IMG/VR virus record: IMGVR_UViG_3300025536_000010
Location: 170,887 to 234,886 of that record
Reading direction: 5' to 3' (one strand)
DNA: 64,000 bases
The position numbers and the translations under genes are program-made. The notes below the pieces were generated by a model. That model saw only the letters and a list, made by a program, of their open reading frames with translations. It did no database searches and was not told where the DNA came from. How positions within the stretch are numbered: position 1 is the stretch's first letter; every line of letters starts with the position of its first letter. Of the stretch, positions 16,592-57,186 are shown piece after piece.

Positions 16592-16783
16592 ATGTTACCT
16601 GAACCATCCAAGCCTGGAGTCCAGCTGTGCATGAAGTGCGGCTGGAAGTTCATCAGTCCTGACCCGGAGCGTATCCGTCGCTGTCAGGACTGCAAGAAAC
16701 ACGAAGAACTGTACGAACCGCCCTCGGGGAGGCTAGTCCTCACCGAGGGCATCGTACACATCCTCTGGGAGTTCCAGCAGTGA
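16592..16783 (+). CDS. Small zinc-ribbon protein
   Basis: GGAGG RBS; CMKCG..F......RRCQDC. Confidence 0.65.
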   Translation: MLPEPSKPGVQLCMKCGWKFISPDPERIRRCQDCKKHEELYEPPSGRLVLTEGIVHILWEFQQ

Positions 16784-17835
16784 GCGTCGTACGCAAGATC
16801 ATCGTCCTGGGTGACGTTATTCTCGACCGTACGGTTTTCTGCCGTATCAAGGGCCTCTCGCCTGAAAACCAAAATATCTTCGACGTCGAAGAGAAGCACG
16901 GCGACAACGCCCTGGGTGGGGCTGGCAACGTCGCTGCCAACTGCTTCGGGCTGTTCGGGCAGAAAGACGGTCAGTCGGTGCTACCGCTGTTCCTGGTCGC
17001 GGCCGACGATGCTGGCAGGGAGATTACCTGCCTGTTGAACTGTCTGCATGTGGAGTACGGCCTGGACCGTTACTACGGCGGCGTGACAGCGGAGAAGATT
17101 CGCTACGTCACCAGCAGTGGTCAGCTGCTGCGCATCAGCCGCGAGGGGTCTGGCGATCTGTCGAGCGGCTACTGGTCCAGCAGCAAGTCCAGTCTGAGCC
17201 TGCGGTTGAACGTGGAGATCCAGGAGCCTGTCCGGCCGGTCGTTTGCCTCGTCGACTACGACAAGGGTTATTTCCGCAGCCCATTGGTTACGGAGATCAT
17301 GGTCAAGCTGATCGGCGCGCAGTGCCCGATCATTGTGGACCCCGGTCGGCACGGTCATTGGGAGCGGTATAACCTGGCCACGGTCATCAAGGCCAACGTC
17401 AAGCAGGCCCAGGCGCACTACGAATCGCATCGGGACAGCCGTGCCGACCTGTGCCCGCCGCTCGACTCCCCGGAGAAGTTCGACCCGAACGAATACGAGT
17501 GTGACTCGTTCTACCGCTCCGTGGCCCACCGGCTGCAACGGCTGCTGGACGACACCAAGGTCAACTACGAGCACATGGTTCTGACGCTGGGGGCCGGCGG
17601 TTTGGCGCACTTCACGCCCAACGGGGAAGTGCAGCTGATGCGTGAGCCGCCTTGTGACATTATCGACGTCACTGGGGCCGGCGATACCGTAATGGCCGCG
17701 CTGGCCGTGGGTATGGCGGAGTACGGGCACGACGCGGGGAACATGGCTGCCAACTGCCGGTTCGCGCTCAAAGCAGCCAACGTCGCCGTCCGGCGGCGCG
17801 GGACGACGGTCGTTCACAGAAAAGACGTGGAGTGA
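16780..17835 (+). CDS. HldE/RfaE domain I-like PfkB sugar kinase (heptose-7-phosphate kinase-like)
   Basis: IIVLGDVILDR, LGGAGNVAAN, T.EKIRY....QLLRI, DYDKG, IIVDP, DVTGAGDTVMA. Confidence 0.85.
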   Translation: MSVVRKIIVLGDVILDRTVFCRIKGLSPENQNIFDVEEKHGDNALGGAGNVAANCFGLFGQKDGQSVLPLFLVAADDAGREITCLLNCLHVEYGLDRYYGGVTAEKIRYVTSSGQLLRISREGSGDLSSGYWSSSKSSLSLRLNVEIQEPVRPVVCLVDYDKGYFRSPLVTEIMVKLIGAQCPIIVDPGRHGHWERYNLATVIKANVKQAQAHYESHRDSRADLCPPLDSPEKFDPNEYECDSFYRSVAHRLQRLLDDTKVNYEHMVLTLGAGGLAHFTPNGEVQLMREPPCDIIDVTGAGDTVMAALAVGMAEYGHDAGNMAANCRFALKAANVAVRRRGTTVVHRKDVE

Positions 17836-18371
17836 TGGAACCCGCACGTTTCACGAACAATTACCCAGGCCCTTACTGGGACATGACCTGGCAGCGTTGG
17901 GCCTATCGGGACGCCCTGGACTGGGCCAAGAAAAACAAGCGGACCATCGTGGTCTGCAACGGCTGCTTCGACTTGCTGCACATCGGCCACCTGCGCGTCT
18001 TTCAGGCGGCGCGCGAGGTGGACCCCGGCAACACGTTCGTCGTCGCTGCGGCAAACGACGACGCCACGGTCAAGAAGCTCAAGGGTAAGAGTCGGCCCTT
18101 CCTCACCTTGGAGCAGCGCCTGCACTTCCTCTACGCCATCCGCTTCGTCGACTTCGCAGTCGGCTTCTGGGAGGACACACCGGAGAAACTGCTCCAGTTC
18201 ACGGAGCCAGACTACCTGGCCAAGGGTGAAGAATACAAGGGTCGTGCCGAAGACATCCCTGGCTACCTATACGCCAAGAAAGGTATGCTGTGGGTGCCGA
18301 TGGAGATTGGCTGTCACACCACCGACCTCGCCCTCAAGATCGCTACCGCGACAAGGAAGTCCCTCGGATAA
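17832..18371 (+). CDS. HldE/RfaE domain II-like nucleotidyltransferase (heptose-1-phosphate adenylyltransferase-like)
   Basis: NGCFDLLHIGH, NDDATVKKLKGKSRP, EDTPEKLL...PDYLAKGEEY. Confidence 0.88.
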   Translation: MMEPARFTNNYPGPYWDMTWQRWAYRDALDWAKKNKRTIVVCNGCFDLLHIGHLRVFQAAREVDPGNTFVVAAANDDATVKKLKGKSRPFLTLEQRLHFLYAIRFVDFAVGFWEDTPEKLLQFTEPDYLAKGEEYKGRAEDIPGYLYAKKGMLWVPMEIGCHTTDLALKIATATRKSLG

Positions 18372-18609: not shown

Positions 18610-18634
18610 TGGCTAAAAGCCACTTTTGAGAACT

Positions 18635-19738
18635 ATGGCACACGACACCCTCTGGCTCTCCGACGCGCACCTGCGCAACCGGAGAGGCGACGAGCAGTTC
18701 GCCCTGCGGCAGTGCATCACGGCCGCGAAGAAACATAAAGTCAAGCAGGTCATCGCCACGGGTGACCTGACCGACCGGCAGACCAACCGTTCTTTGCCCA
18801 TCTCCTTCTGGATGAAGCAGATTGACCGGCTCGAAGAAGCCGGTATCGCTTTCTGGTTCCTCCAGGGCAATCACGACGAAGACGAGCCGCCCTGGCTCTC
18901 GGCGCACCGGCACGCCAAGCACCTGCACAACCGCAGCGTTCAGGTCGGCCCCTACACTGGCTTCGGCCTCGACTTCCAGCCTTTCGGCAAACTGCAAGAG
19001 GTGCTGCCCGAGTTGCCGGCGGAGGCCAACCTGCTCATCTGCCACCAGGCGTGGAGCGAGTGGATGCACTTCGATGACGTCCCCCAGGGGGATTTCGCGC
19101 AGGTGCCGGGACACTTCTCGCACGTTTTCTCCGGGGACTACCACCGCAAGAAGGTGGATAAGTGCAAAAATGCAGACGGCGACAAGATGATCTGCGCCTC
19201 CGTGGGGGCGACCTGCGCTCAGAAGATCGACGAACCCCACGAGCACTACTACTGCCTGATCGGCGACGATGGCCAGCTGCGTTTCGAGAAGCTGCACAGC
19301 CGCGTCTATATCGAGTGGCCAGTCATGAACCGACCGGACGACCTGGATCAGTTCATGGAGGAGTACGACTCGGAACTGGCCAGGGCGGAGCAGCATGCTG
19401 CCGCCAACGACTACCCGGAGACGCTGGTCCGTCCCTACCTGCGCGTCACCTACAGCCACAAGCTGAACGACGCCGTCGCCCGTGTCACGAAGGCAGTTGG
19501 GGAGCGAGCAATCCTTTACTGGAAAGAGATCCCGCCCGAGGACAAGCAGCCGACCAAAAACAAGCCTGCCAAGGTCGGTAAGGAAGAAGCGGTCACACCT
19601 CTGAGCGTACTCGCCCAGGAGGTCGACAAGGAGAAGGAGCCCGAGGTTTTTGAACTCTGCACCCGGCTGCTCCAGGCCCCTGCGACCTTCAAAGAGGAGT
19701 TTGCCCGCTGGAAGGCCGAACGACTGCTGGAGGGGTGA
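18635..19738 (+). CDS. sbcD: SbcD/Mre11-like metallophosphoesterase nuclease
   Basis: SDAH, GDLTD, GNHD, CHQ, GDYH motifs; upstream of sbcC. Confidence 0.88.
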   Translation: MAHDTLWLSDAHLRNRRGDEQFALRQCITAAKKHKVKQVIATGDLTDRQTNRSLPISFWMKQIDRLEEAGIAFWFLQGNHDEDEPPWLSAHRHAKHLHNRSVQVGPYTGFGLDFQPFGKLQEVLPELPAEANLLICHQAWSEWMHFDDVPQGDFAQVPGHFSHVFSGDYHRKKVDKCKNADGDKMICASVGATCAQKIDEPHEHYYCLIGDDGQLRFEKLHSRVYIEWPVMNRPDDLDQFMEEYDSELARAEQHAAANDYPETLVRPYLRVTYSHKLNDAVARVTKAVGERAILYWKEIPPEDKQPTKNKPAKVGKEEAVTPLSVLAQEVDKEKEPEVFELCTRLLQAPATFKEEFARWKAERLLEG

Positions 19739-20960: not shown

Positions 20961-23108
20961 ATGCACTTCCGCAAGCTACACTTCAAGAACGCCTGCCGGT
21001 TCGAGGACTTTCAGGTGGACCTCAAGAAGGGGTCCGTGGGGGTCTTCGGCAAGAACGGCATCGGTAAGAGCACCCTGCTCAACTTCATGTACGCCATACC
21101 CACAAATGACTTCTCGCGCTTCGAGGGGGTCAAGACGGACTGCATCCGCTACGGCGCACCGGAGAAGGCGGAGAGCTTTCTCTACGGCGAGATCGAGCAC
21201 AACGATCACCTGCTGTGCATCAAGCGGAACTTCAAGCCCACCAAGAACAACCCTGGCACGGTGCTGGTGGTCGACGGCGGTAAGGAGATCACTGACGCCA
21301 ACAAGGCCGAGGAAGAGATCGGCAAGATCCTGGGCGTCGACAAGAAGATGCTCGGGCTCTACGCTTTCAAGACCCAGGACCGCATCTACGACTTCCTGAC
21401 GACCACGCCGACCGAGCGAGCCAAGGCATTTGCCGTCCTGTGCCGCACGGAGGTCTGCGAGGAGATGTGGGACTTCCTGGGCGAGTTCCTCAACAAGGAC
21501 AGCGAGATCAACGCCGTTATCGTCGACAACTCCGACGAACTGCTGGCCGAGATCGCGGCGCTCAAGGGCCAGATCGAGGAACTGGATGCCTCGATCAAGC
21601 AGGAAGAGGAGCGGCTGCTCAACTCCAAAAGCGAGGCATCGGCCCGGGACATCCTCAAGAAGCAGGACCGTAAGGAGGATCTGCTCGGGCAGCAGGAGCG
21701 CTTGCAAGCCAGTCTGGAAGAAAGCCAGGTAACGCTGGCCGAGAAGCAGGAGCGCCTGGCTAAGAGCGAGCGTGTGCGCAAGAAGCGCGCCGAGGACGTC
21801 GAAAGTCTTTGCGTAGCCGCGGACGACGCCAAAGCCGCGCTCAAGGCGTGGGACGCCTACAAGAAGTACCGTGCGCGCCGTAAGGCCCTCAACGTGGAAG
21901 CCGAGGCCCTGGACCGCGAGGAGGAGGAGAATAAGCCGCCGGTGCAGCCGAAGGACTACGGCAAGCACGATCTGGACGCACTGCGCAAACAGGTGGTCGA
22001 TATGGAGTCTGCTTTGGACAGGGCCAAAGCCGTTGTCGCCAAGTTCCAAAGCCAAAAGATCGTGGCTTGCCCGACTTGTAACACGCCGGTCACGGATCTG
22101 GCAGATCACCTGAACGAACAGCGCAAGATCGTCCTGGAGTACCCCAAGGAGGTCGAGCGTCTGGATACCATCGTTGAAACGATGACGGTCTACGACAACA
22201 AGGTTCGCAAGTACGAGAAGTGGTCGGCCGGGTTCGAGGCACGGCGCAAAGCCAACCAGGATGCCCGGGCTGCCCTCAAGGGCATCAATACGCCGGACGG
22301 CGACGAGGCTGATCTCAACAAGGTCATCGAACAGTACCAGGAAGCTGTCCAAGCGCTCACGGAGATTGTTGGCAAGGTCGAGAACACACGCCGCGCCGTG
22401 ACGACTGCGGAGGCTGCGCAGGAGGCTACGCAGAAACGATTGGCCGAGGTGGCCGAAGGCGTCGTGGAGAACACGGTCGACGCGGCCAAGGTGGAGCGGG
22501 CCAGGGAGCGCTTGGAGGAGCATATCGCGTCGGGTAAGAACATCGCACGCATCCAGGGCGAGTGGAAGGGCGTGCAGGCGCAGATCGAAAGCAAGGAGGA
22601 AGACCTGCGCAAGCTGCGCAACCGTCTCAAGCGCAGCAAGAAGGTACGGGCTGTGGCCCGGGTGGCCGAGCGGGTGCGGGACGTCTTGCACCGCGACCGG
22701 CTGCCGCGGCGCGTGGCTGCTACCAACCTGTCACGCATGGAGGGTGACATCAACGAGGGCCTGGGTTACTTCGGCGATCCGTTCTGGGTGGAGTCCGACG
22801 AGAGCCTCCAGTTCACGGCGCACAAACCGGGTGAACCGCCACAACCGGCTCTACGGTTGTCGACCGGGCAGAAGGTCGTGTTGGCGATGGCGTTCTGGCC
22901 TGCGGTGGGCTCGCTCTGGCAGCAGGATCTCGGTATGCTGGCCTTGGATGAGCCGACTGCCAATCTGGACGAGGAGAACCGGAAATTCCTCAGTCAGGCC
23001 CTGGGCGCCATGTCGGCCAAATGCCGCGGGCGGCGGCAACTCATTCTCGTGACGCACGACCCAAACCTGGCGAACTCCTTCGACCAGGTTATCAAACTGG
23101 AGACGTAG
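20961..23108 (+). CDS. sbcC: SbcC/Rad50-like SMC ATPase
   Basis: GKNGIGKST, Q-loop, coiled coil with CPTC zinc hook, LSTGQ signature, LALDEPTANLD, VTH. Confidence 0.92.
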   Translation: MHFRKLHFKNACRFEDFQVDLKKGSVGVFGKNGIGKSTLLNFMYAIPTNDFSRFEGVKTDCIRYGAPEKAESFLYGEIEHNDHLLCIKRNFKPTKNNPGTVLVVDGGKEITDANKAEEEIGKILGVDKKMLGLYAFKTQDRIYDFLTTTPTERAKAFAVLCRTEVCEEMWDFLGEFLNKDSEINAVIVDNSDELLAEIAALKGQIEELDASIKQEEERLLNSKSEASARDILKKQDRKEDLLGQQERLQASLEESQVTLAEKQERLAKSERVRKKRAEDVESLCVAADDAKAALKAWDAYKKYRARRKALNVEAEALDREEEENKPPVQPKDYGKHDLDALRKQVVDMESALDRAKAVVAKFQSQKIVACPTCNTPVTDLADHLNEQRKIVLEYPKEVERLDTIVETMTVYDNKVRKYEKWSAGFEARRKANQDARAALKGINTPDGDEADLNKVIEQYQEAVQALTEIVGKVENTRRAVTTAEAAQEATQKRLAEVAEGVVENTVDAAKVERARERLEEHIASGKNIARIQGEWKGVQAQIESKEEDLRKLRNRLKRSKKVRAVARVAERVRDVLHRDRLPRRVAATNLSRMEGDINEGLGYFGDPFWVESDESLQFTAHKPGEPPQPALRLSTGQKVVLAMAFWPAVGSLWQQDLGMLALDEPTANLDEENRKFLSQALGAMSAKCRGRRQLILVTHDPNLANSFDQVIKLET

Positions 23109-53481: not shown

Positions 53482-54252
53482 ATGAGCCTGTTCTATTCGG
53501 ACTTTTGGGGCTCGGCTCGCTCGCGGGCCAAGGCCGCCGCCGCCAGCGGTGTGCAACGTGCAAAAAAGAAATCTGGAAAGGCGAAGGCTACCGTCTCGTC
53601 GACGGCCTCGCCTACCACCAAGCCTGCGCCCCGAAACAAGCAACCGGACCCGCTGGAGGTGGTGGCGTGGTTCGTGGCCCATGTCCAGGCCCGTGACACG
53701 CCGATTTACCTGGGCATCGACCCAGGCGCCACGGGCGCGATTGGGATGCTGTGCGGCAAGCTGTACGCGGTCGTCGACATCCCCGTCTACCGGGTGAAGG
53801 TCAAACGTGTCCGGCACAACAACAAGAAGATCCGTGCTTTGACGGGCCGGAAAACCCGGACGGTCGACGGCTCGACGAGCAAGTTCGACTTTCCGGCAAT
53901 CTGTCGGCTGTTTCGCTTGTTCAAGCCGATCAAGAAAAAACTCATCGTCGTCCTCGAAGAGATTCCGCCGACGATGGGCAAGCGCGCACGCAAATACGTT
54001 GAGATCATGGTGAACCGCGCCTACGCGATCTGGCCGCTGTTTCTCTGCTCGAAAGGCTACACGGTCAAAGAGATCAAGCCTTCGGACTGGAAGAAGCGGA
54101 TGGACCTGTACGGCAAGGACAAGGAGGCGTCTCGCCGGCTAGCGCTCAAGATCTTCCCGATGGCGAACATCCAACGCAAGGAAGACACTGATCGGGCCGA
54201 GGCGCTGCTGATAGCTGAATGCGTACGAAGGATACATAATGGCAAAGCGTAA
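53482..54252 (+). CDS. RuvC-like Holliday junction resolvase
   Basis: LGIDPGATGAIG, VLEE, P..WKK, DRAEALLIA. Confidence 0.85.
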   Translation: MSLFYSDFWGSARSRAKAAAASGVQRAKKKSGKAKATVSSTASPTTKPAPRNKQPDPLEVVAWFVAHVQARDTPIYLGIDPGATGAIGMLCGKLYAVVDIPVYRVKVKRVRHNNKKIRALTGRKTRTVDGSTSKFDFPAICRLFRLFKPIKKKLIVVLEEIPPTMGKRARKYVEIMVNRAYAIWPLFLCSKGYTVKEIKPSDWKKRMDLYGKDKEASRRLALKIFPMANIQRKEDTDRAEALLIAECVRRIHNGKA

Positions 54253-55081
54253 ACCCGCCGACCATGTGCAGTTCGCTCAGTACGGCGATTGCGTCAAACT
54301 GTTCCAGGCGTCGACGAAAAAGTACGACCTCATCGTCGCCGACCCGCCGTACAACTTCGGGATGCCGTACGAGGCATACGACGACAACAAGTCCTACGAA
54401 GCCTACATGAAGTGGACCGATCAGTGGCTCGGGGCCGCCCTGAGCCGTCTTGCGCCGCACGGTAGCATGTTCATTTTCGTGCCCGACGAATGGGTCACGG
54501 AGATCGACTACAAATGCACGCATCACTACCAGCTGTACAAGCGGCGGCACATCCTCTGGGCTTTCACCTTCGGGCAGAAGGCTCACCGCAACTTCACGAG
54601 AAGCCACTGCCACATTCTCTACTACACCAAGACCAAGACGCGGTTCACGTTCAACGAGGACGCGGTCAAGGTGCCGTCGGCGCGGCAGCTGGTGTACAAC
54701 GACCCCAGGGCCGCCAAAGGCGGCAAACCGCCCGACGCGACCTGGATGCTGCTCAAGGAGCAGTTGGAGCCGTACATGACGCCGGACACAGACACCTGGC
54801 TCGTATCCAGGATCTGTGGTACTTACAAGGAACGCGAAAAGCACAGCCCGAACCAGATCCCGGTGCCGATCACCGCCAGGATCGTGCGAGCGTGTTCCAA
54901 CCCAGGTGACTGGGTTTGTGATCCGTTTTGCGGCACCGGCAGCAGCGGCGTGGCCTGTGCCGGCAACAGCAGGAACTGGGACGGTTTCGACGTGGGCAGG
55001 AACTGCGTCAAACAGTCGCAGCGACGGATCAACGAGGTAAGGAAACTCAATGGACTCGGCAAACTCGCAGCGCTCGTCTGA
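54239..55081 (+). CDS. DNA N6-adenine/N4-cytosine methyltransferase (beta class), orphan
   Basis: DPPY precedes DPFCGTGS. Confidence 0.9.
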   Translation: MAKRKPADHVQFAQYGDCVKLFQASTKKYDLIVADPPYNFGMPYEAYDDNKSYEAYMKWTDQWLGAALSRLAPHGSMFIFVPDEWVTEIDYKCTHHYQLYKRRHILWAFTFGQKAHRNFTRSHCHILYYTKTKTRFTFNEDAVKVPSARQLVYNDPRAAKGGKPPDATWMLLKEQLEPYMTPDTDTWLVSRICGTYKEREKHSPNQIPVPITARIVRACSNPGDWVCDPFCGTGSSGVACAGNSRNWDGFDVGRNCVKQSQRRINEVRKLNGLGKLAALV

Positions 55082-55178
55082 GCCGGCTACCGCCGGGGCC
55101 GCACTGCTGATTTGCGCTATCCTAGCGATGGGCGTGCTTATCACCGTGGCCGCGTTGGTCATAGTGGCCCTGTTGTAA
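55050..55178 (+). CDS. 42-aa single-helix membrane peptide
   Basis: AAGGA RBS; MDSANSQRSSEPATAGAALLICAILAMGVLITVAALVIVALL. Confidence 0.55.
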   Translation: MDSANSQRSSEPATAGAALLICAILAMGVLITVAALVIVALL

Positions 55179-55201
55179 AAAGTGGCTTTTGGGGACGCAT
55201 C

Positions 55202-56515
55202 ATGGTCAGGAAGAAAGTCAAGCAGCGTGAGGCAGCAGCCAAATCCAAGACCGTCAAGAAACGAGTCACCACGGCCGACCTGAGCAAGGCCCTCAAGGTC
55301 AAACCACTCCGAGCGGGCAGCCCGGCCTCGAAACTCGTCGATCCCGCGGACGGCCTGCCGCAAACGCCGATCCTGTCTTCGCGGGCGATGGGTATCGACG
55401 TCAACGACTATCAGATGCTGCCCCAGGCCGTACCGGACAACCTGTCGCCTGAGCAGCGGGCAATCAAGGAAGCTGGCAAGCTCGCTGACGACCTGCTCAA
55501 GCGCGAGGAATGGTCGCACGTTTTCCAGGCCATGAAGACGCTGCGCCAGGGCTACGCCGTGGTCTACCGCTGCCTGCAAGATCTCTGCGCCAAGCTGCAC
55601 GAAGACTTCGAGAAGCGTGGCGTGGAGATGCCTCTGGTGGAGGACTTCCTGATCCAGTACGCCATGTACGAGTCCTCCAAGCCGTTCACGGAACACCAGT
55701 GGATGGACAACGTCATCAACTCCTTCCTGCCCTGGCTGGCAACCGTGCTCGACGAACACACGGCTGCCGACGAGAAAGAGGCACAGGACCAACGCATCAA
55801 GGAGAACGAGGAGCGGCAGACGCGCCCAGTGCCCATCGGTTTCAAGCACACGCCAGAGCTTGAAGCTGCCATGCTGGAGCGGGACCGTAGCCTGGTCCTG
55901 GTCGGCTGGAAGCCGGCTATCTTGTGGTTGCTGGACCAGGTCTGCTCGCACGCCCTCCTCAGTAAGGACGAGCAGGTTTACCAGGTGGTGCGGTTCATGG
56001 ATAGCGCACCCAAGGGCAAAGACCAGCATTCTCGTCTCATCCGCCTGGGTGGTAACGCCTGGCGCGGTTGTGCCGACTCGGACAAGAAGCTGGCGATGTG
56101 TATGGGCAGCTATGTCGCCGACCGCATTTCCGCCCAGCCCGATCTGTTCATCGTCGACCATCTGCCCAGCGCCTATACGGCTGGCTTCGTCGGCAGGCCC
56201 GAAGCAGCCAGGGCGGGCGACGCCCACCGCCGGTTTCACAAATGGTGCGAGAAGGCTGCCTGTGCTTTCCTCGGCTGTGTTTGCGTTCCCGAACGCGGCA
56301 CGCCCGACATCACCGACCCGGCGTTTGAGCAACTTCGCACCTTCGCTACTTTGCGTCCGGTCATCGTGCAGGACGAAGCGGAGGATCTGGAACCCAACAA
56401 GTACCGAATCATCATTGGGCACGCGGCAACTGTGCTCGATGTCGAGAAGGACGTGATCGAGTCCTACGGGCGGACCATATTGCTGCCCGCAGGCCGTAGT
56501 ACCATCGAAGGATAA
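55202..56515 (+). CDS. Hypothetical protein, possible degenerate DnaB/RecA-fold C-terminal domain
   Basis: SLVLVG with no GKT; PDLFIVDHL resembles Walker B. Confidence 0.6.
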   Translation: MVRKKVKQREAAAKSKTVKKRVTTADLSKALKVKPLRAGSPASKLVDPADGLPQTPILSSRAMGIDVNDYQMLPQAVPDNLSPEQRAIKEAGKLADDLLKREEWSHVFQAMKTLRQGYAVVYRCLQDLCAKLHEDFEKRGVEMPLVEDFLIQYAMYESSKPFTEHQWMDNVINSFLPWLATVLDEHTAADEKEAQDQRIKENEERQTRPVPIGFKHTPELEAAMLERDRSLVLVGWKPAILWLLDQVCSHALLSKDEQVYQVVRFMDSAPKGKDQHSRLIRLGGNAWRGCADSDKKLAMCMGSYVADRISAQPDLFIVDHLPSAYTAGFVGRPEAARAGDAHRRFHKWCEKAACAFLGCVCVPERGTPDITDPAFEQLRTFATLRPVIVQDEAEDLEPNKYRIIIGHAATVLDVEKDVIESYGRTILLPAGRSTIEG

Positions 56516-56517
56516 CC

Positions 56518-57186
56518 ATGACAGCAAAAATCTTTGTCGGCTTTCGTACGCGGCCGGTGGAGGACTTCAAGGAATTCATGCCGAAGTTCTCCGCCTCCCG
56601 CGTTTTGACGGACCCCAAGAAAATCGAGGCCGACATCCAGGCCAAGGCCGAGATGTTCGTTTCGACCTGCAAGGACGCGCCGTACACCGGGACGTTCGAC
56701 GAGGTCTTCCTGGTGGACCGCCGGAAGAAGAAAGTGCTCCAGTGGCTCTACCCGCCCAAGGACAGTGACAAGCCGCGCATCTGCGTCAGCGTCCGTAACT
56801 ACCTGCTCAAGGCGTACCCGACCGCCTGGGACTGGGATACGCACGGTAAGAGGCCGGAGGTCGTCTTCCTCGGGTTCAACCCGAGATTGTTTTTGAAGAT
56901 GCTCGGCCTGGAGTGTTCTCTGCCGGGCGTTGGTAAACCCTTGCCGCCGAAACTGTGGTACAGTAACTCGGACCACAGAGACATCGAGGAGGCGGTGCTG
57001 CCCAAGGACTTCGAGAAAGTCTTGACCCTGGACACCGTCATCAAGCGCCGCCGCCCGCTTGATCCCGAGGCGGCCAAGAAGTGGGACGAACACGTCAAGG
57101 ACTGGCCCGGCCCCGGGCAAGTTCCCAGGAAGGACGTCGAGATCGCCATCGAACTTGCTGCGCAGTTAGGGTTCCTGTCGGAGTAG
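56518..57186 (+). CDS. Degenerate 3'-5' exonuclease-like protein
   Basis: IFVGFRT in place of DIET; DPKKI...P.TG; FLGFN; terminal KDV. Confidence 0.5.
   Translation: MTAKIFVGFRTRPVEDFKEFMPKFSASRVLTDPKKIEADIQAKAEMFVSTCKDAPYTGTFDEVFLVDRRKKKVLQWLYPPKDSDKPRICVSVRNYLLKAYPTAWDWDTHGKRPEVVFLGFNPRLFLKMLGLECSLPGVGKPLPPKLWYSNSDHRDIEEAVLPKDFEKVLTLDTVIKRRRPLDPEAAKKWDEHVKDWPGPGQVPRKDVEIAIELAAQLGFLSE

What the first reader, a model, noticed from the sequence alone, without database searches (positions are those of the whole stretch)
16780..18371. Phage-encoded split HldE-like NDP-heptose synthesis pair
A kinase and a nucleotidyltransferase matching the two HldE/RfaE domains are coupled by a GTGA overlap, sitting among early and recombination genes and not in a sugar-biosynthesis island. 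No gmhA or gmhB is visible in the window. The kinase has KANVKQ where PfkB/HldE enzymes have PN..E, and the transferase ends GCHTT in place of G.STT, so substrate or nucleotide preference may differ. ADP-heptose is an LPS-core and S-layer precursor. A phage could use it to alter the host receptor or to glycosylate its own proteins or DNA.
Basis: partly seen in the sequence, partly recalled or inferred. Interest (0 to 1): 0.62.

Follow-up and report, generated by a model that had tools for sequence, protein, structure and literature searches.

The report
Split HldE-like pair in huge phage
A 235-kb environmental phage carries its own two-gene version of the bacterial enzyme HldE, which activates the sugar heptose, most likely to feed a heptosyltransferase-like enzyme encoded beside its tail-fibre gene; genes of this type have been listed in virus surveys, so this is a well-documented new example, not a new kind of system.

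Summary
Window 16780-17835 encodes a PfkB kinase and 17832/17835-18371 a cytidylyltransferase-fold enzyme. Their best family, sequence and fold matches are HldE domain I / HldA and HldE domain II / HldC, though both score below NCBI's equivalog cut-offs. The window is the end of a complete 234,886-bp phage from a subsurface metagenome.

The pair is a self-contained accessory module at a fixed site just upstream of sbcD. In 19 related huge-phage genomes, the same 8 carry both activities (split, fused or unlinked) and 11 carry neither. None has gmhA, gmhB or hldD. No other gene of this phage co-varies with the pair.

The odd kinase motif NVKQ (normally NxxE) is a clade trait, but it also occurs in some bacterial HldA, so it does not indicate a new substrate.

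Every family member encodes a GT9-fold plus GT-A-fold glycosyltransferase just after the tail-fibre gene. The best reading is ADP-heptose supply for a phage glycan, using the host's GmhA and GmhB. DNA heptosylation is unlikely because no hydroxymethyl-pyrimidine route exists. All function is inferred, with no biochemistry.

The parts
16592..16783 (+). 63-aa small ORF with two CxxC pairs (zinc-ribbon-like). Its stop overlaps the kinase start (GTGA).
   Evidence: Homologues lie next to sbcD in relatives with and without the pair, so it marks the insertion site and is not part of the pathway.
16780..17835 (+). [quoted passage not shown]
   Evidence: TIGR02198 144.5 bits (cut-off 345) against ribokinase 42.8. 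PDB sequence best hit is HldA 4e84. AF2 model has pLDDT 90.1. Foldseek ranks 1-7 are all HldA, E 3e-26 to 1e-23, and the next PfkB enzymes are near 3e-18.
17389..17406 (+). K-A-N-V-K-Q: the PfkB NxxE motif with Gln in place of Glu.
   Evidence: Conserved as NxxQ in 18 of 19 split-clade kinases. Also Q in some bacterial HldA-like proteins. E or D in the fused phage forms and in G013.
17416..17502 (+). Approximate clade-specific insertion (about residues 213-241) after the NxxQ motif.
   Evidence: Absent from bacterial HldE/HldA in alignment A1. Partly low-confidence loop in the model, with pLDDT under 50 at residues 223-226.
17674..17685 (+). G-A-G-D catalytic motif of PfkB kinases (D302).
   Evidence: Invariant in all phage and bacterial rows.
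17832..18371 (+). HldC / HldE-domain-II-like nucleotidyltransferase (179 aa from GTG 17832, or 178 aa from ATG 17835), predicted heptose-1-phosphate adenylyltransferase.
   Evidence: TIGR02199 106.5 bits (cut-off 181.5) against TagD 40.3. PDB best single stretch is HldC 5x9q, 62.5 bits, against about 30 per stretch for ECT. PHROG 7878.
17979..17990 (+). H-I-G-H nucleotide-binding motif (HxGH).
18309..18323 (+). G-C-H-T-T, where E. coli HldE has G-C-S-T-T.
   Evidence: His is shared by some clade members (L005, L007, G011, P0123). Others keep Ser (L003, L004, G013, fused forms).
18626..19738 (+). SbcD-like nuclease. This is the conserved downstream anchor of the module.
   Evidence: PHROG 100 and Metallophos. 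Directly downstream of the HldE genes in G013, G011, G016, G018 and G012.
20961..23108 (+). SbcC-like ATPase (context).
   Evidence: PHROG 77, E 1.4e-45.

Best explanation
The two genes encode a working, split HldE. [quoted passage not shown] An HldC-type nucleotidyltransferase converts heptose-1-phosphate plus ATP into ADP-heptose. The phage encodes only these two steps. The heptose-7-phosphate (GmhA step) and the 7-dephosphorylation (GmhB step) must come from the host.

The pair is an old, self-contained accessory module at a fixed site just upstream of sbcD in a family of huge phages, and it has been fused or split and repeatedly lost.

Its most likely purpose is to keep up the supply of activated heptose during infection for a phage-made glycan. 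The best candidate consumer is the family-wide two-domain glycosyltransferase (GT9 heptosyltransferase fold plus GT-A fold) encoded immediately after the collagen-like tail-fibre gene, about 23 kb upstream of the window.

Shown: homology, fold, motif retention, synteny and the presence/absence pattern. Inferred: substrate, product, dependence on the host, and the acceptor.
For: Identity of the two enzymes:
- HMM best hits are rfaE_dom_I and rfaE_dom_II, with 60-100 bit margins over the next families.
- Best PDB sequence hits are HldA and HldC.
- The kinase model matches HldA far above other PfkB kinases.
- GAGD, GD, GGAxN, K106/R108 and DYxKG are retained in the kinase. HxGH, NSDxS, KGxxRP and ExTP are retained in the transferase.
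- GC3 is native to the genome.

The two act as one unit:
- The same 8 of 19 related genomes carry both, and 11 carry neither.
- The domains are fused into 482-506-aa proteins in five relatives.
- The pair sits at the same site upstream of sbcD across genomes with about 36-50% mean core identity. In relatives that lack it, the small ORF abuts sbcD.
- Kinase relatives P0003-P0018 show the same synteny.

Candidate consumer:
- The GT9-like protein has over 400 relatives at 41-63% identity, most with a PF01075 hit.
- Foldseek's top 28 matches are all GT9 heptosyltransferases, including TibC with ADP-heptose. VIA Z is 19-23.
- Profile hits in the PDB are only WaaC and WaaF.
- It lies after a PHROG tail-fibre/collagen gene in conserved synteny.
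- The genome also holds five GT2 genes, a GT1, a GT8, an FkbM methyltransferase, a sulfotransferase and two collagen-repeat proteins.

No other gene co-varies with the pair, which fits a consumer that is either a core gene or a host function.
Against: - Both proteins score far below NCBIfam's equivalog cut-offs (144.5 against 345, and 106.5 against 181.5).
- Only 10 of 24 HldE-specific conserved positions are strictly kept. Several residues of the RISPEAPVP lid differ.
- NxxE is NxxQ, and STT is HTT.
- No gmhA, gmhB or hldD occurs in this genome or in any of 19 relatives. The host is unknown, so the supply of substrate is an assumption.
- The GT9-like protein has Val/Ile where GT9 enzymes have the Asp of D-[ST]-G-x-x-H, and its PF01075 score is borderline (21.2-23.6 against 22).
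- 11 of 19 relatives have the GT9-like gene without the pair, so the link is not exclusive.
- The pair sits in the replication module, not beside any glycosyltransferase.
- There are no expression or biochemical data.
Confidence: 0.55

Rival explanations
1. The pair modifies the host surface. It boosts ADP-heptose so that LPS core, O-antigen or capsule is remodelled during infection, by phage or host glycosyltransferases. This would block superinfection by other phages or stop progeny from re-adsorbing.
For: Iyer et al. 2021 read PfkB kinases plus HIGH-superfamily nucleotidyltransferases plus glycosyltransferases in jumbo cyanophages in this way (PMC7824862). rfaE and waaF are reported as viral AMGs under LPS biosynthesis (PMC10653327). 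WaaC and WaaF, which act on LPS, are among the best fold matches of the GT9-like protein. The genome has many glycosyltransferases, an FkbM methyltransferase and a sulfotransferase.
Against: The GT9-like gene is a core gene in fixed synteny with tail and fibre genes, not part of a variable polysaccharide cluster. A host with LPS heptose already has HldE. Nothing else co-varies with the pair.
Confidence: 0.2
2. The pair supports DNA hypermodification. It makes an NDP-heptose that a phage DNA glycosyltransferase attaches to a modified base, as in the reported 5-heptosyl-hydroxymethylcytosine cluster, to evade restriction.
For: Precedent: a phage cluster with a HAD/APH-like kinase, a cytidylyltransferase and a GT-B DNA glycosyltransferase makes mono- and di-heptosyl-5hmC (bioRxiv 10.1101/2023.12.21.572611). 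Here the pair lies among replication and recombination genes, and a GT1 (GT-B) gene exists in the genome.
Against: No ThyA-type hydroxymethylase, TET/JBP dioxygenase or C5 methylase was found in six-frame searches of the complete genome. The nucleotide genes are ThyX and a dCTP-deaminase-like protein. No T4-type DNA glucosyltransferase family appeared in the Pfam survey. No gene co-varies with the pair.
Confidence: 0.07
3. The chemistry is the same but the sugar is different. The kinase and transferase activate another phosphosugar (for example a different heptose or hexose phosphate, or the 1,7-bisphosphate directly, giving ADP-heptose-7-P), or they use a nucleotide other than ATP.
For: Scores lie below the equivalog cut-offs. 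14 of 24 HldE-specific positions are not strictly kept, including lid residues. There is a clade-specific 30-45-aa insertion next to the active-site motif. No GmhA or GmhB is present anywhere in the family. The GT9-like donor pocket lacks the canonical Asp.
Against: The nearest families by a wide margin are the heptose enzymes. Fused phage versions have canonical NxxE and STT and occupy the same locus. K106, R108, D120, E122 and DYxKG, which distinguish HldE from RbsK and PfkB, are invariant or nearly so.
Confidence: 0.13
4. The genes are decaying or non-functional passengers.
For: The distribution is patchy and the closest relatives lack them.
Against: The frames are intact, GC3 is native, catalytic motifs are invariant across a clade at 31-44% identity, the model is confident, and the overlap coupling is conserved in G013 and G011.
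Confidence: 0.02

Closest known systems
E. coli HldE (RfaE) and the split Burkholderia HldA + HldC
   Same: Same two folds and catalytic motifs (GAGD; HxGH). Same order, kinase then transferase. HldA and HldC are the best solved matches. Split and fused forms both occur, as in bacteria.
   Different: Below the equivalog scores. NxxQ replaces NxxE. A 30-45-aa insertion follows the motif. DPGRxGxW replaces DPK. HTT replaces STT. It is encoded by a phage without gmhA, gmhB or hldD, and it sits beside sbcD instead of in an LPS locus.
Phage heptosyl-5hmC biosynthetic cluster ('contig 53', bioRxiv 10.1101/2023.12.21.572611)
   Same: A phage-encoded kinase plus a cytidylyltransferase-family enzyme supply an activated heptose from the host metabolite pool.
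   Different: That kinase is APH-like and fused to a HAD phosphatase. That cluster includes a T4-beta-GT-like DNA glycosyltransferase and sits with 5hmC-forming enzymes. None of those is present here.
PfkB kinase + HIGH nucleotidyltransferase + glycosyltransferase clusters of jumbo cyanophages (Iyer et al. 2021, PMC7824862)
   Same: The same enzyme superfamilies in jumbo phages, predicted to make NDP-sugars for glycans.
   Different: There the genes are clustered with epimerases and glycosyltransferases and were read as host polysaccharide modification. Here the pair is isolated in the replication module and is specifically HldE-like.
GT9 heptosyltransferases WaaC/WaaF and the protein O-heptosyltransferase TibC (for the candidate consumer)
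   Same: GT-B fold with Z 19-23. N-terminal GD at the same position. Phosphate-binding Lys and motif His are retained.
   Different: It is fused to a C-terminal GT-A domain with DDD. Val/Ile replaces the Asp of D-[ST]-G-x-x-H. It has four family-invariant cysteines. It is encoded after a phage tail-fibre gene.

Membership tests
HldA / HldE domain I (TIGR02198, heptose-7-phosphate kinase) | Best-scoring family model is rfaE_dom_I, and the score reaches the equivalog cut-off. | tested here: not met
   It is the best hit (144.5 bits, E 3.9e-42; the next family is ribokinase at 42.8), but the cut-off is 345.
HldA / HldE domain I (TIGR02198, heptose-7-phosphate kinase) | PfkB fold with GAGD catalytic Asp, and closest solved structure is HldA. 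| tested here: met
   GAGD is invariant. Foldseek ranks 1-7 are HldA, TM up to 0.85, E 3e-26, against about 3e-18 for other PfkB kinases.
HldA / HldE domain I (TIGR02198, heptose-7-phosphate kinase) | NxxE Mg/phosphate motif. | tested here: not met
   The motif is NVKQ. Q is shared by 18 of 19 split-clade members and by some bacterial HldA-like proteins.
HldA / HldE domain I (TIGR02198, heptose-7-phosphate kinase) | Residues conserved in HldE/HldA but absent from RbsK and PfkB. | tested here: inconclusive
   10 of 24 are strictly kept (D18, A53, K106, R108, D120, E122, D151, Y152, K154, G155, E. coli numbering). Lid residues R31, A36 and P39 are changed. Contact residues could not be checked because the HldA paper is not held.
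HldA / HldE domain I (TIGR02198, heptose-7-phosphate kinase) | Phosphorylates D-glycero-D-manno-heptose-7-P at O1. | not testable with these tools
   Needs an enzyme assay or complementation.
HldC / HldE domain II (TIGR02199, heptose-1-phosphate adenylyltransferase) | Best family model is rfaE_dom_II, and the score reaches the cut-off. | tested here: not met
   It is the best hit (106.5 bits, E 1e-30; the next family is TagD at 40.3), but the cut-off is 181.5.
HldC / HldE domain II (TIGR02199, heptose-1-phosphate adenylyltransferase) | HxGH, NSDxS, KGxxRP and ExTP motifs. | tested here: met
   HIGH, NDDAT, KGKSRP and EDTP are present.
HldC / HldE domain II (TIGR02199, heptose-1-phosphate adenylyltransferase) | C-terminal xSTT motif. 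| tested here: not met
   The motif is CHTT. His or Ser varies within the clade.
HldC / HldE domain II (TIGR02199, heptose-1-phosphate adenylyltransferase) | Functional coupling with the kinase (fusion in relatives). | tested here: met
   The domains are fused in G015-G019. The kinase and transferase co-occur in 8 of 8 genomes and are jointly absent in 11 of 11.
Complete ADP-L,D-heptose pathway (GmhA, HldE, GmhB, HldD) | GmhA isomerase, GmhB phosphatase and HldD epimerase are present. | tested here: not met
   No SIS_2, SIS, Histidinol-ppas, HAD_2 or Epimerase hit in the complete genome. No SIS_2 or Histidinol-ppas hit in 19 relatives.
GT9 heptosyltransferase (candidate consumer, outside the window) | GT-B fold closest to GT9 enzymes. 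| tested here: met
   Foldseek's top 28 are all GT9. VIA Z is 23.4 to 19.3 over 253-269 residues.
GT9 heptosyltransferase (candidate consumer, outside the window) | PF01075 above the gathering score. | tested here: inconclusive
   23.6 bits in six-frame search and 21.2 on the protein, against a cut-off of 22. Most relatives carry a precomputed PF01075 hit.
GT9 heptosyltransferase (candidate consumer, outside the window) | Donor-site residues: Lys (WaaC K192) and the D-[ST]-G-x-x-H motif. | tested here: not met
   Lys and His are retained, but the Asp is Val/Ile throughout the family (VTGAMH).
Phage DNA-heptosylation cluster | A route to 5-hydroxymethyl-pyrimidine, plus a DNA glycosyltransferase beside the sugar-activation genes. 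| tested here: not met
   No Thymidylat_synt, Tet_JBP or C5 DNA_methylase. No glycosyltransferase lies next to the pair.

The most novel reading that the evidence does not exclude
A whole family of huge phages decorates its collagen-like tail fibres (or another virion protein) with heptose, using a TibC-like GT9 domain fused to a GT-A domain. About half of the family carries its own HldE module to secure the donor. This would be the first case of virion protein heptosylation by a virus. The NxxQ kinase variant may escape the regulation that limits the host enzyme.
Probability: 0.25. Interest if true: 0.7.

Novelty: new member of a known kind. Interest (0 to 1): 0.42.

Why it matters
If the pair really makes ADP-heptose for a phage glycan, it shows that huge phages carry not only glycosyltransferases but also the donor-activation steps for a sugar otherwise typical of bacterial envelopes. 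Virion glycans can affect adsorption, stability and recognition. The clean presence/absence polymorphism at one locus, with fused and split forms, gives a natural experiment on why a virus needs its own supply of a host metabolite. It also shows how bifunctional enzymes split or fuse. The finding does not open a new class of system: HldE-type genes in viral contigs, and kinase plus nucleotidyltransferase pairs in jumbo phages, have been reported at the annotation level.

Tried and rejected
- **Close relatives in phage collections:** blastn of the locus against INPHARED phages gave no match. tblastn of the kinase gave only remote hits. The search for related loci with either single protein in IMG/VR found nothing. 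Relatives were reached only through the word-indexed protein search and a family alignment of the GT9-like protein.
- **Rooted kinase tree:** with E. coli RbsK and PfkB as outgroups, the branches were too long (5-6 changes per site) and RbsK was drawn into the phage group. The root and the position relative to other PfkB families are unresolved. The careful unrooted search and the AU test for one origin of all phage kinases did not finish in time.
- **A dedicated partner gene:** presence/absence profiling of all 258 called genes against 7 HldE-plus and 5 HldE-minus genomes found none.
- **HldA contact residues from the literature:** the paper is not held.
- **First gene call:** the longest-ORF call picked antisense ORFs, so I replaced it with a GC3-based call.
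Full report
**What is there.** The window is the last 64 kb of a single 234,886-bp virus record, which CheckV estimates as complete. Its DNA was found in only one public sample, a subsurface metagenome that is probably its source.

On the + strand, 16780-17835 encodes a 351-aa protein and 17832-18371 a 179-aa protein. The junction reads GTGATG. The second gene therefore starts either at GTG 17832 (4-nt overlap) or, as in the database copy of 178 aa, at ATG 17835 (1-nt overlap). The kinase start itself overlaps the stop of a 63-aa CxxC...CxxC ORF by GTGA.

Both genes have the codon-position GC of the rest of the genome: GC3 is 0.81, against 0.81-0.83 for the SbcD, SbcC and polymerase genes checked. 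Downstream lie SbcD-like, SbcC-like, helicase, DnaB-like, primase and PolA genes.

**What the two proteins are.**
- *Kinase, by family model.* The best NCBIfam model is rfaE_dom_I (144.5 bits, E 3.9e-42). The next family, ribokinase, scores 42.8.
- *Transferase, by family model.* The best model is rfaE_dom_II (106.5 bits), and the next is TagD at 40.3.
- *Caveat on scores.* Both are far under the equivalog cut-offs (345 and 181.5), so these are a divergent subfamily and not orthologue-grade matches.
- *Solved structures by sequence.* The best hits are Burkholderia HldA (4e84, E 1.5e-16) and HldC (5x9q, 62.5 bits in one stretch). Ethanolamine-phosphate cytidylyltransferase reaches a similar total only by summing two stretches of about 30 bits.
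- *Kinase fold.* An AlphaFold model (pLDDT 90.1, pTM 0.92) matches HldA at Foldseek ranks 1-7 (E 3e-26 to 1e-23, TM up to 0.85). Ribokinase, YihV and Pfk-2 follow at about 3e-18.

**Motifs.**
- The kinase keeps GAGD, the N-terminal GD..D, SPE, GGAxN, K106/R108, R118 and DYxKG.
- Of 56 columns at least 90% conserved in 36 bacterial HldE/HldA, 34 are kept in the phage clade. Of the 24 that also differ from RbsK and PfkB, 10 are strictly kept. Several lid residues are changed.
NxxQ is shared by 18 of 19 split-clade kinases, together with a 30-45-aa insertion just after it.
- However, a group of bacterial HldA-like proteins also has Q (TPNHLQ), and the fused phage forms keep E or D. The substitution is a lineage trait and not evidence of another substrate.
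- The transferase keeps HxGH, NSDxS, KGxxRP and ExTP. GCHTT stands where E. coli HldE has GCSTT, and His or Ser varies within the clade.

**Relatives and locus history.** The kinase has 16 closer relatives (31-43% identity, 112-268 bits), above the mass of bacterial HldE/HldA at 97 bits or less. Four of their contigs show the same order: small ORF, kinase, transferase, SbcD-like, then (where the contig reaches far enough) SbcC-like and helicase.

Through the GT9-like protein (see below) I reached 50 IMG/VR loci. In the 19 contigs of at least 150 kb:
- The same 8 hold both a kinase and a transferase, and the other 11 hold neither. Among genomes at least 90% complete, the split is 6 of 11.
- In G015-G019 the two domains are one 482-506-aa protein. 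In G013 and G011 they are split with a 4-nt overlap, as here. In G012 they are unlinked.
- The HldE genes always sit just upstream of sbcD. In G001 and G003, which lack them and are this phage's closest relatives (56-63% mean core identity), the small ORF lies 84-94 nt from sbcD.

So this is one old locus with fusion or fission and repeated loss (or gain). In trees the split clade is one group (SH-aLRT 91-94). Its relation to the fused phage forms and to the bacterial groups, and the root, are unresolved.

**Rest of the pathway.** Six-frame family searches found no GmhA-type SIS, no GmhB-type HAD and no epimerase in this complete genome. None of the 19 relatives has a SIS_2 or Histidinol-ppas match. 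The lineage encodes only the two HldE steps. The heptose-7-phosphate and the 7-phosphatase must be the host's, unless the chemistry differs.

**Who uses the product.** A Glyco_transf_9 search hit one gene, at genome 147148-149259, about 23 kb upstream of the window.
- *Conservation.* It is a 703-aa protein conserved at 41-63% identity in more than 400 proteins, most with a PF01075 hit, many on 130-240-kb contigs.
- *N-terminal domain.* The model (pLDDT 84.6) matches only GT9 heptosyltransferases at the top: Veillonella GT9, WaaF, WaaC, and TibC solved with ADP-heptose. Foldseek E values are 3e-10 to 1e-7 and VIA Z is 19-23.
- *C-terminal domain.* It is a GT-A fold with an invariant DDD.
- *Sequence profile.* The only significant PDB hits are WaaC and WaaF. 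hhalign gives WaaF 86% probability.
- *Catalytic residues.* The phosphate-binding Lys and the motif His are kept, and a GD sits at the same N-terminal position as WaaC and WaaF D13. But the Asp of D-[ST]-G-x-x-H is Val/Ile in the whole family. The donor pocket is therefore not canonical.
- *Context.* The gene follows a 1098-aa collagen-repeat/CBM protein that matches many PHROG tail-fibre families, and a GT2-methyltransferase. The synteny is conserved across the family.

The genome also carries five GT2 genes, a GT1, a GT8, an FkbM methyltransferase, a sulfotransferase and a second strong collagen-repeat protein.

An unbiased profile of all 258 called genes, against 7 HldE-plus and 5 HldE-minus genomes, found that only the transferase (7 against 0) and the kinase (3 against 0 at tblastn sensitivity) follow the pattern. 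No dedicated partner exists, so the consumer is either a core gene, such as the GT9-like protein, or a host function.

**Rivals.**
- *DNA heptosylation.* It has a precedent, and the pair lies in the replication module. But the genome has no ThyA-type hydroxymethylase, TET/JBP dioxygenase or C5 methylase. Its nucleotide genes are ThyX and a dCTP-deaminase-like protein.
- *Host-surface remodelling against superinfection.* This was proposed for similar genes in jumbo cyanophages and remains possible.
- *A different sugar or nucleotide.* The sub-threshold scores, the changed lid and the non-canonical GT9 pocket do not allow me to exclude it.

**Verdict.** The identification as a phage-encoded split HldE-like pair is well supported by homology, fold and the fused forms in relatives. 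The motif-based hint of new specificity is not supported.

The most likely role is ADP-heptose supply for a phage-made glycan, probably on the tail fibre, with the host's GmhA and GmhB providing the other steps. This is inference only.

HldE-type genes in viral contigs, PHROG 7878 and kinase-nucleotidyltransferase pairs in jumbo phages are already on record. I therefore file this as a new member of a known kind, of moderate interest.

Noticed in passing
window 16592-16783: A 63-aa ORF with two CxxC pairs is conserved next to sbcD in relatives with and without the HldE module (39-55% identity in G001, G003, G006, G011, G013). Its function is unknown.
   Followed up: partly
L002:11149-13260 (genome 147148-149259, outside the window): The GT9-like/GT-A protein has four family-invariant cysteines (C266, C275, C298, C312) in a segment between the GT-B core and the linker. 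This recalls the iron-finger of TibC. I could not check whether they cluster in space.
   Followed up: partly
genome 1-67 kb (L014-L017) and L002:6514-11152: There is a large glycan toolkit for a phage: five GT2 genes, a GT1, a GT8, an FkbM-type and other methyltransferases, a sulfotransferase, DUF6445, two collagen-repeat proteins and a matrixin-type metalloprotease.
   Followed up: partly
genome 1-176 kb (alignments A4, A5): Typical huge-phage extras are present: a tubulin/PhuZ-like protein, multisubunit RNA polymerase beta and beta-prime, a sigma-70-like factor, GroES, class II ribonucleotide reductase, a caspase-like peptidase, a CAP-domain protein, an intein and a NUDIX protein.
   Followed up: no
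window (alignment A3; genes not individually placed): ThyX, a dCTP-deaminase-like protein, a UDG-superfamily protein, DUF1643, an N6/N4 DNA methylase and an RNA polymerase alpha-CTD-like domain are encoded in the window. I saw nothing pointing to base replacement.
   Followed up: no
G019:C1:140414-140914 (relative; L077): The transferase part of the fused HldE of this 75%-complete relative contains one in-frame TGA, according to the six-frame search. It could be a sequencing error, a pseudogene or a split in the making.
   Followed up: no
G012 (L080 and G012:C1:51643-52050): In this complete relative, the transferase stays upstream of sbcD but the kinase lies about 86 kb away. Its motifs are aberrant (NRKK in place of NxxE/Q; GCGD in place of GAGD) and its composition is odd.
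   Followed up: partly
L003:5824-7734: A relative's contig carries a 636-aa protein with a weak Cas12f1-like TNB (TnpB-like) hit just upstream of the small ORF and kinase.
   Followed up: no
whole window, - strand: Many long antisense ORFs (for example 54146-56527, 793 aa) are artefacts of 60% GC. Real genes have GC3 near 0.82, while the antisense frames have high GC1.
   Followed up: yes
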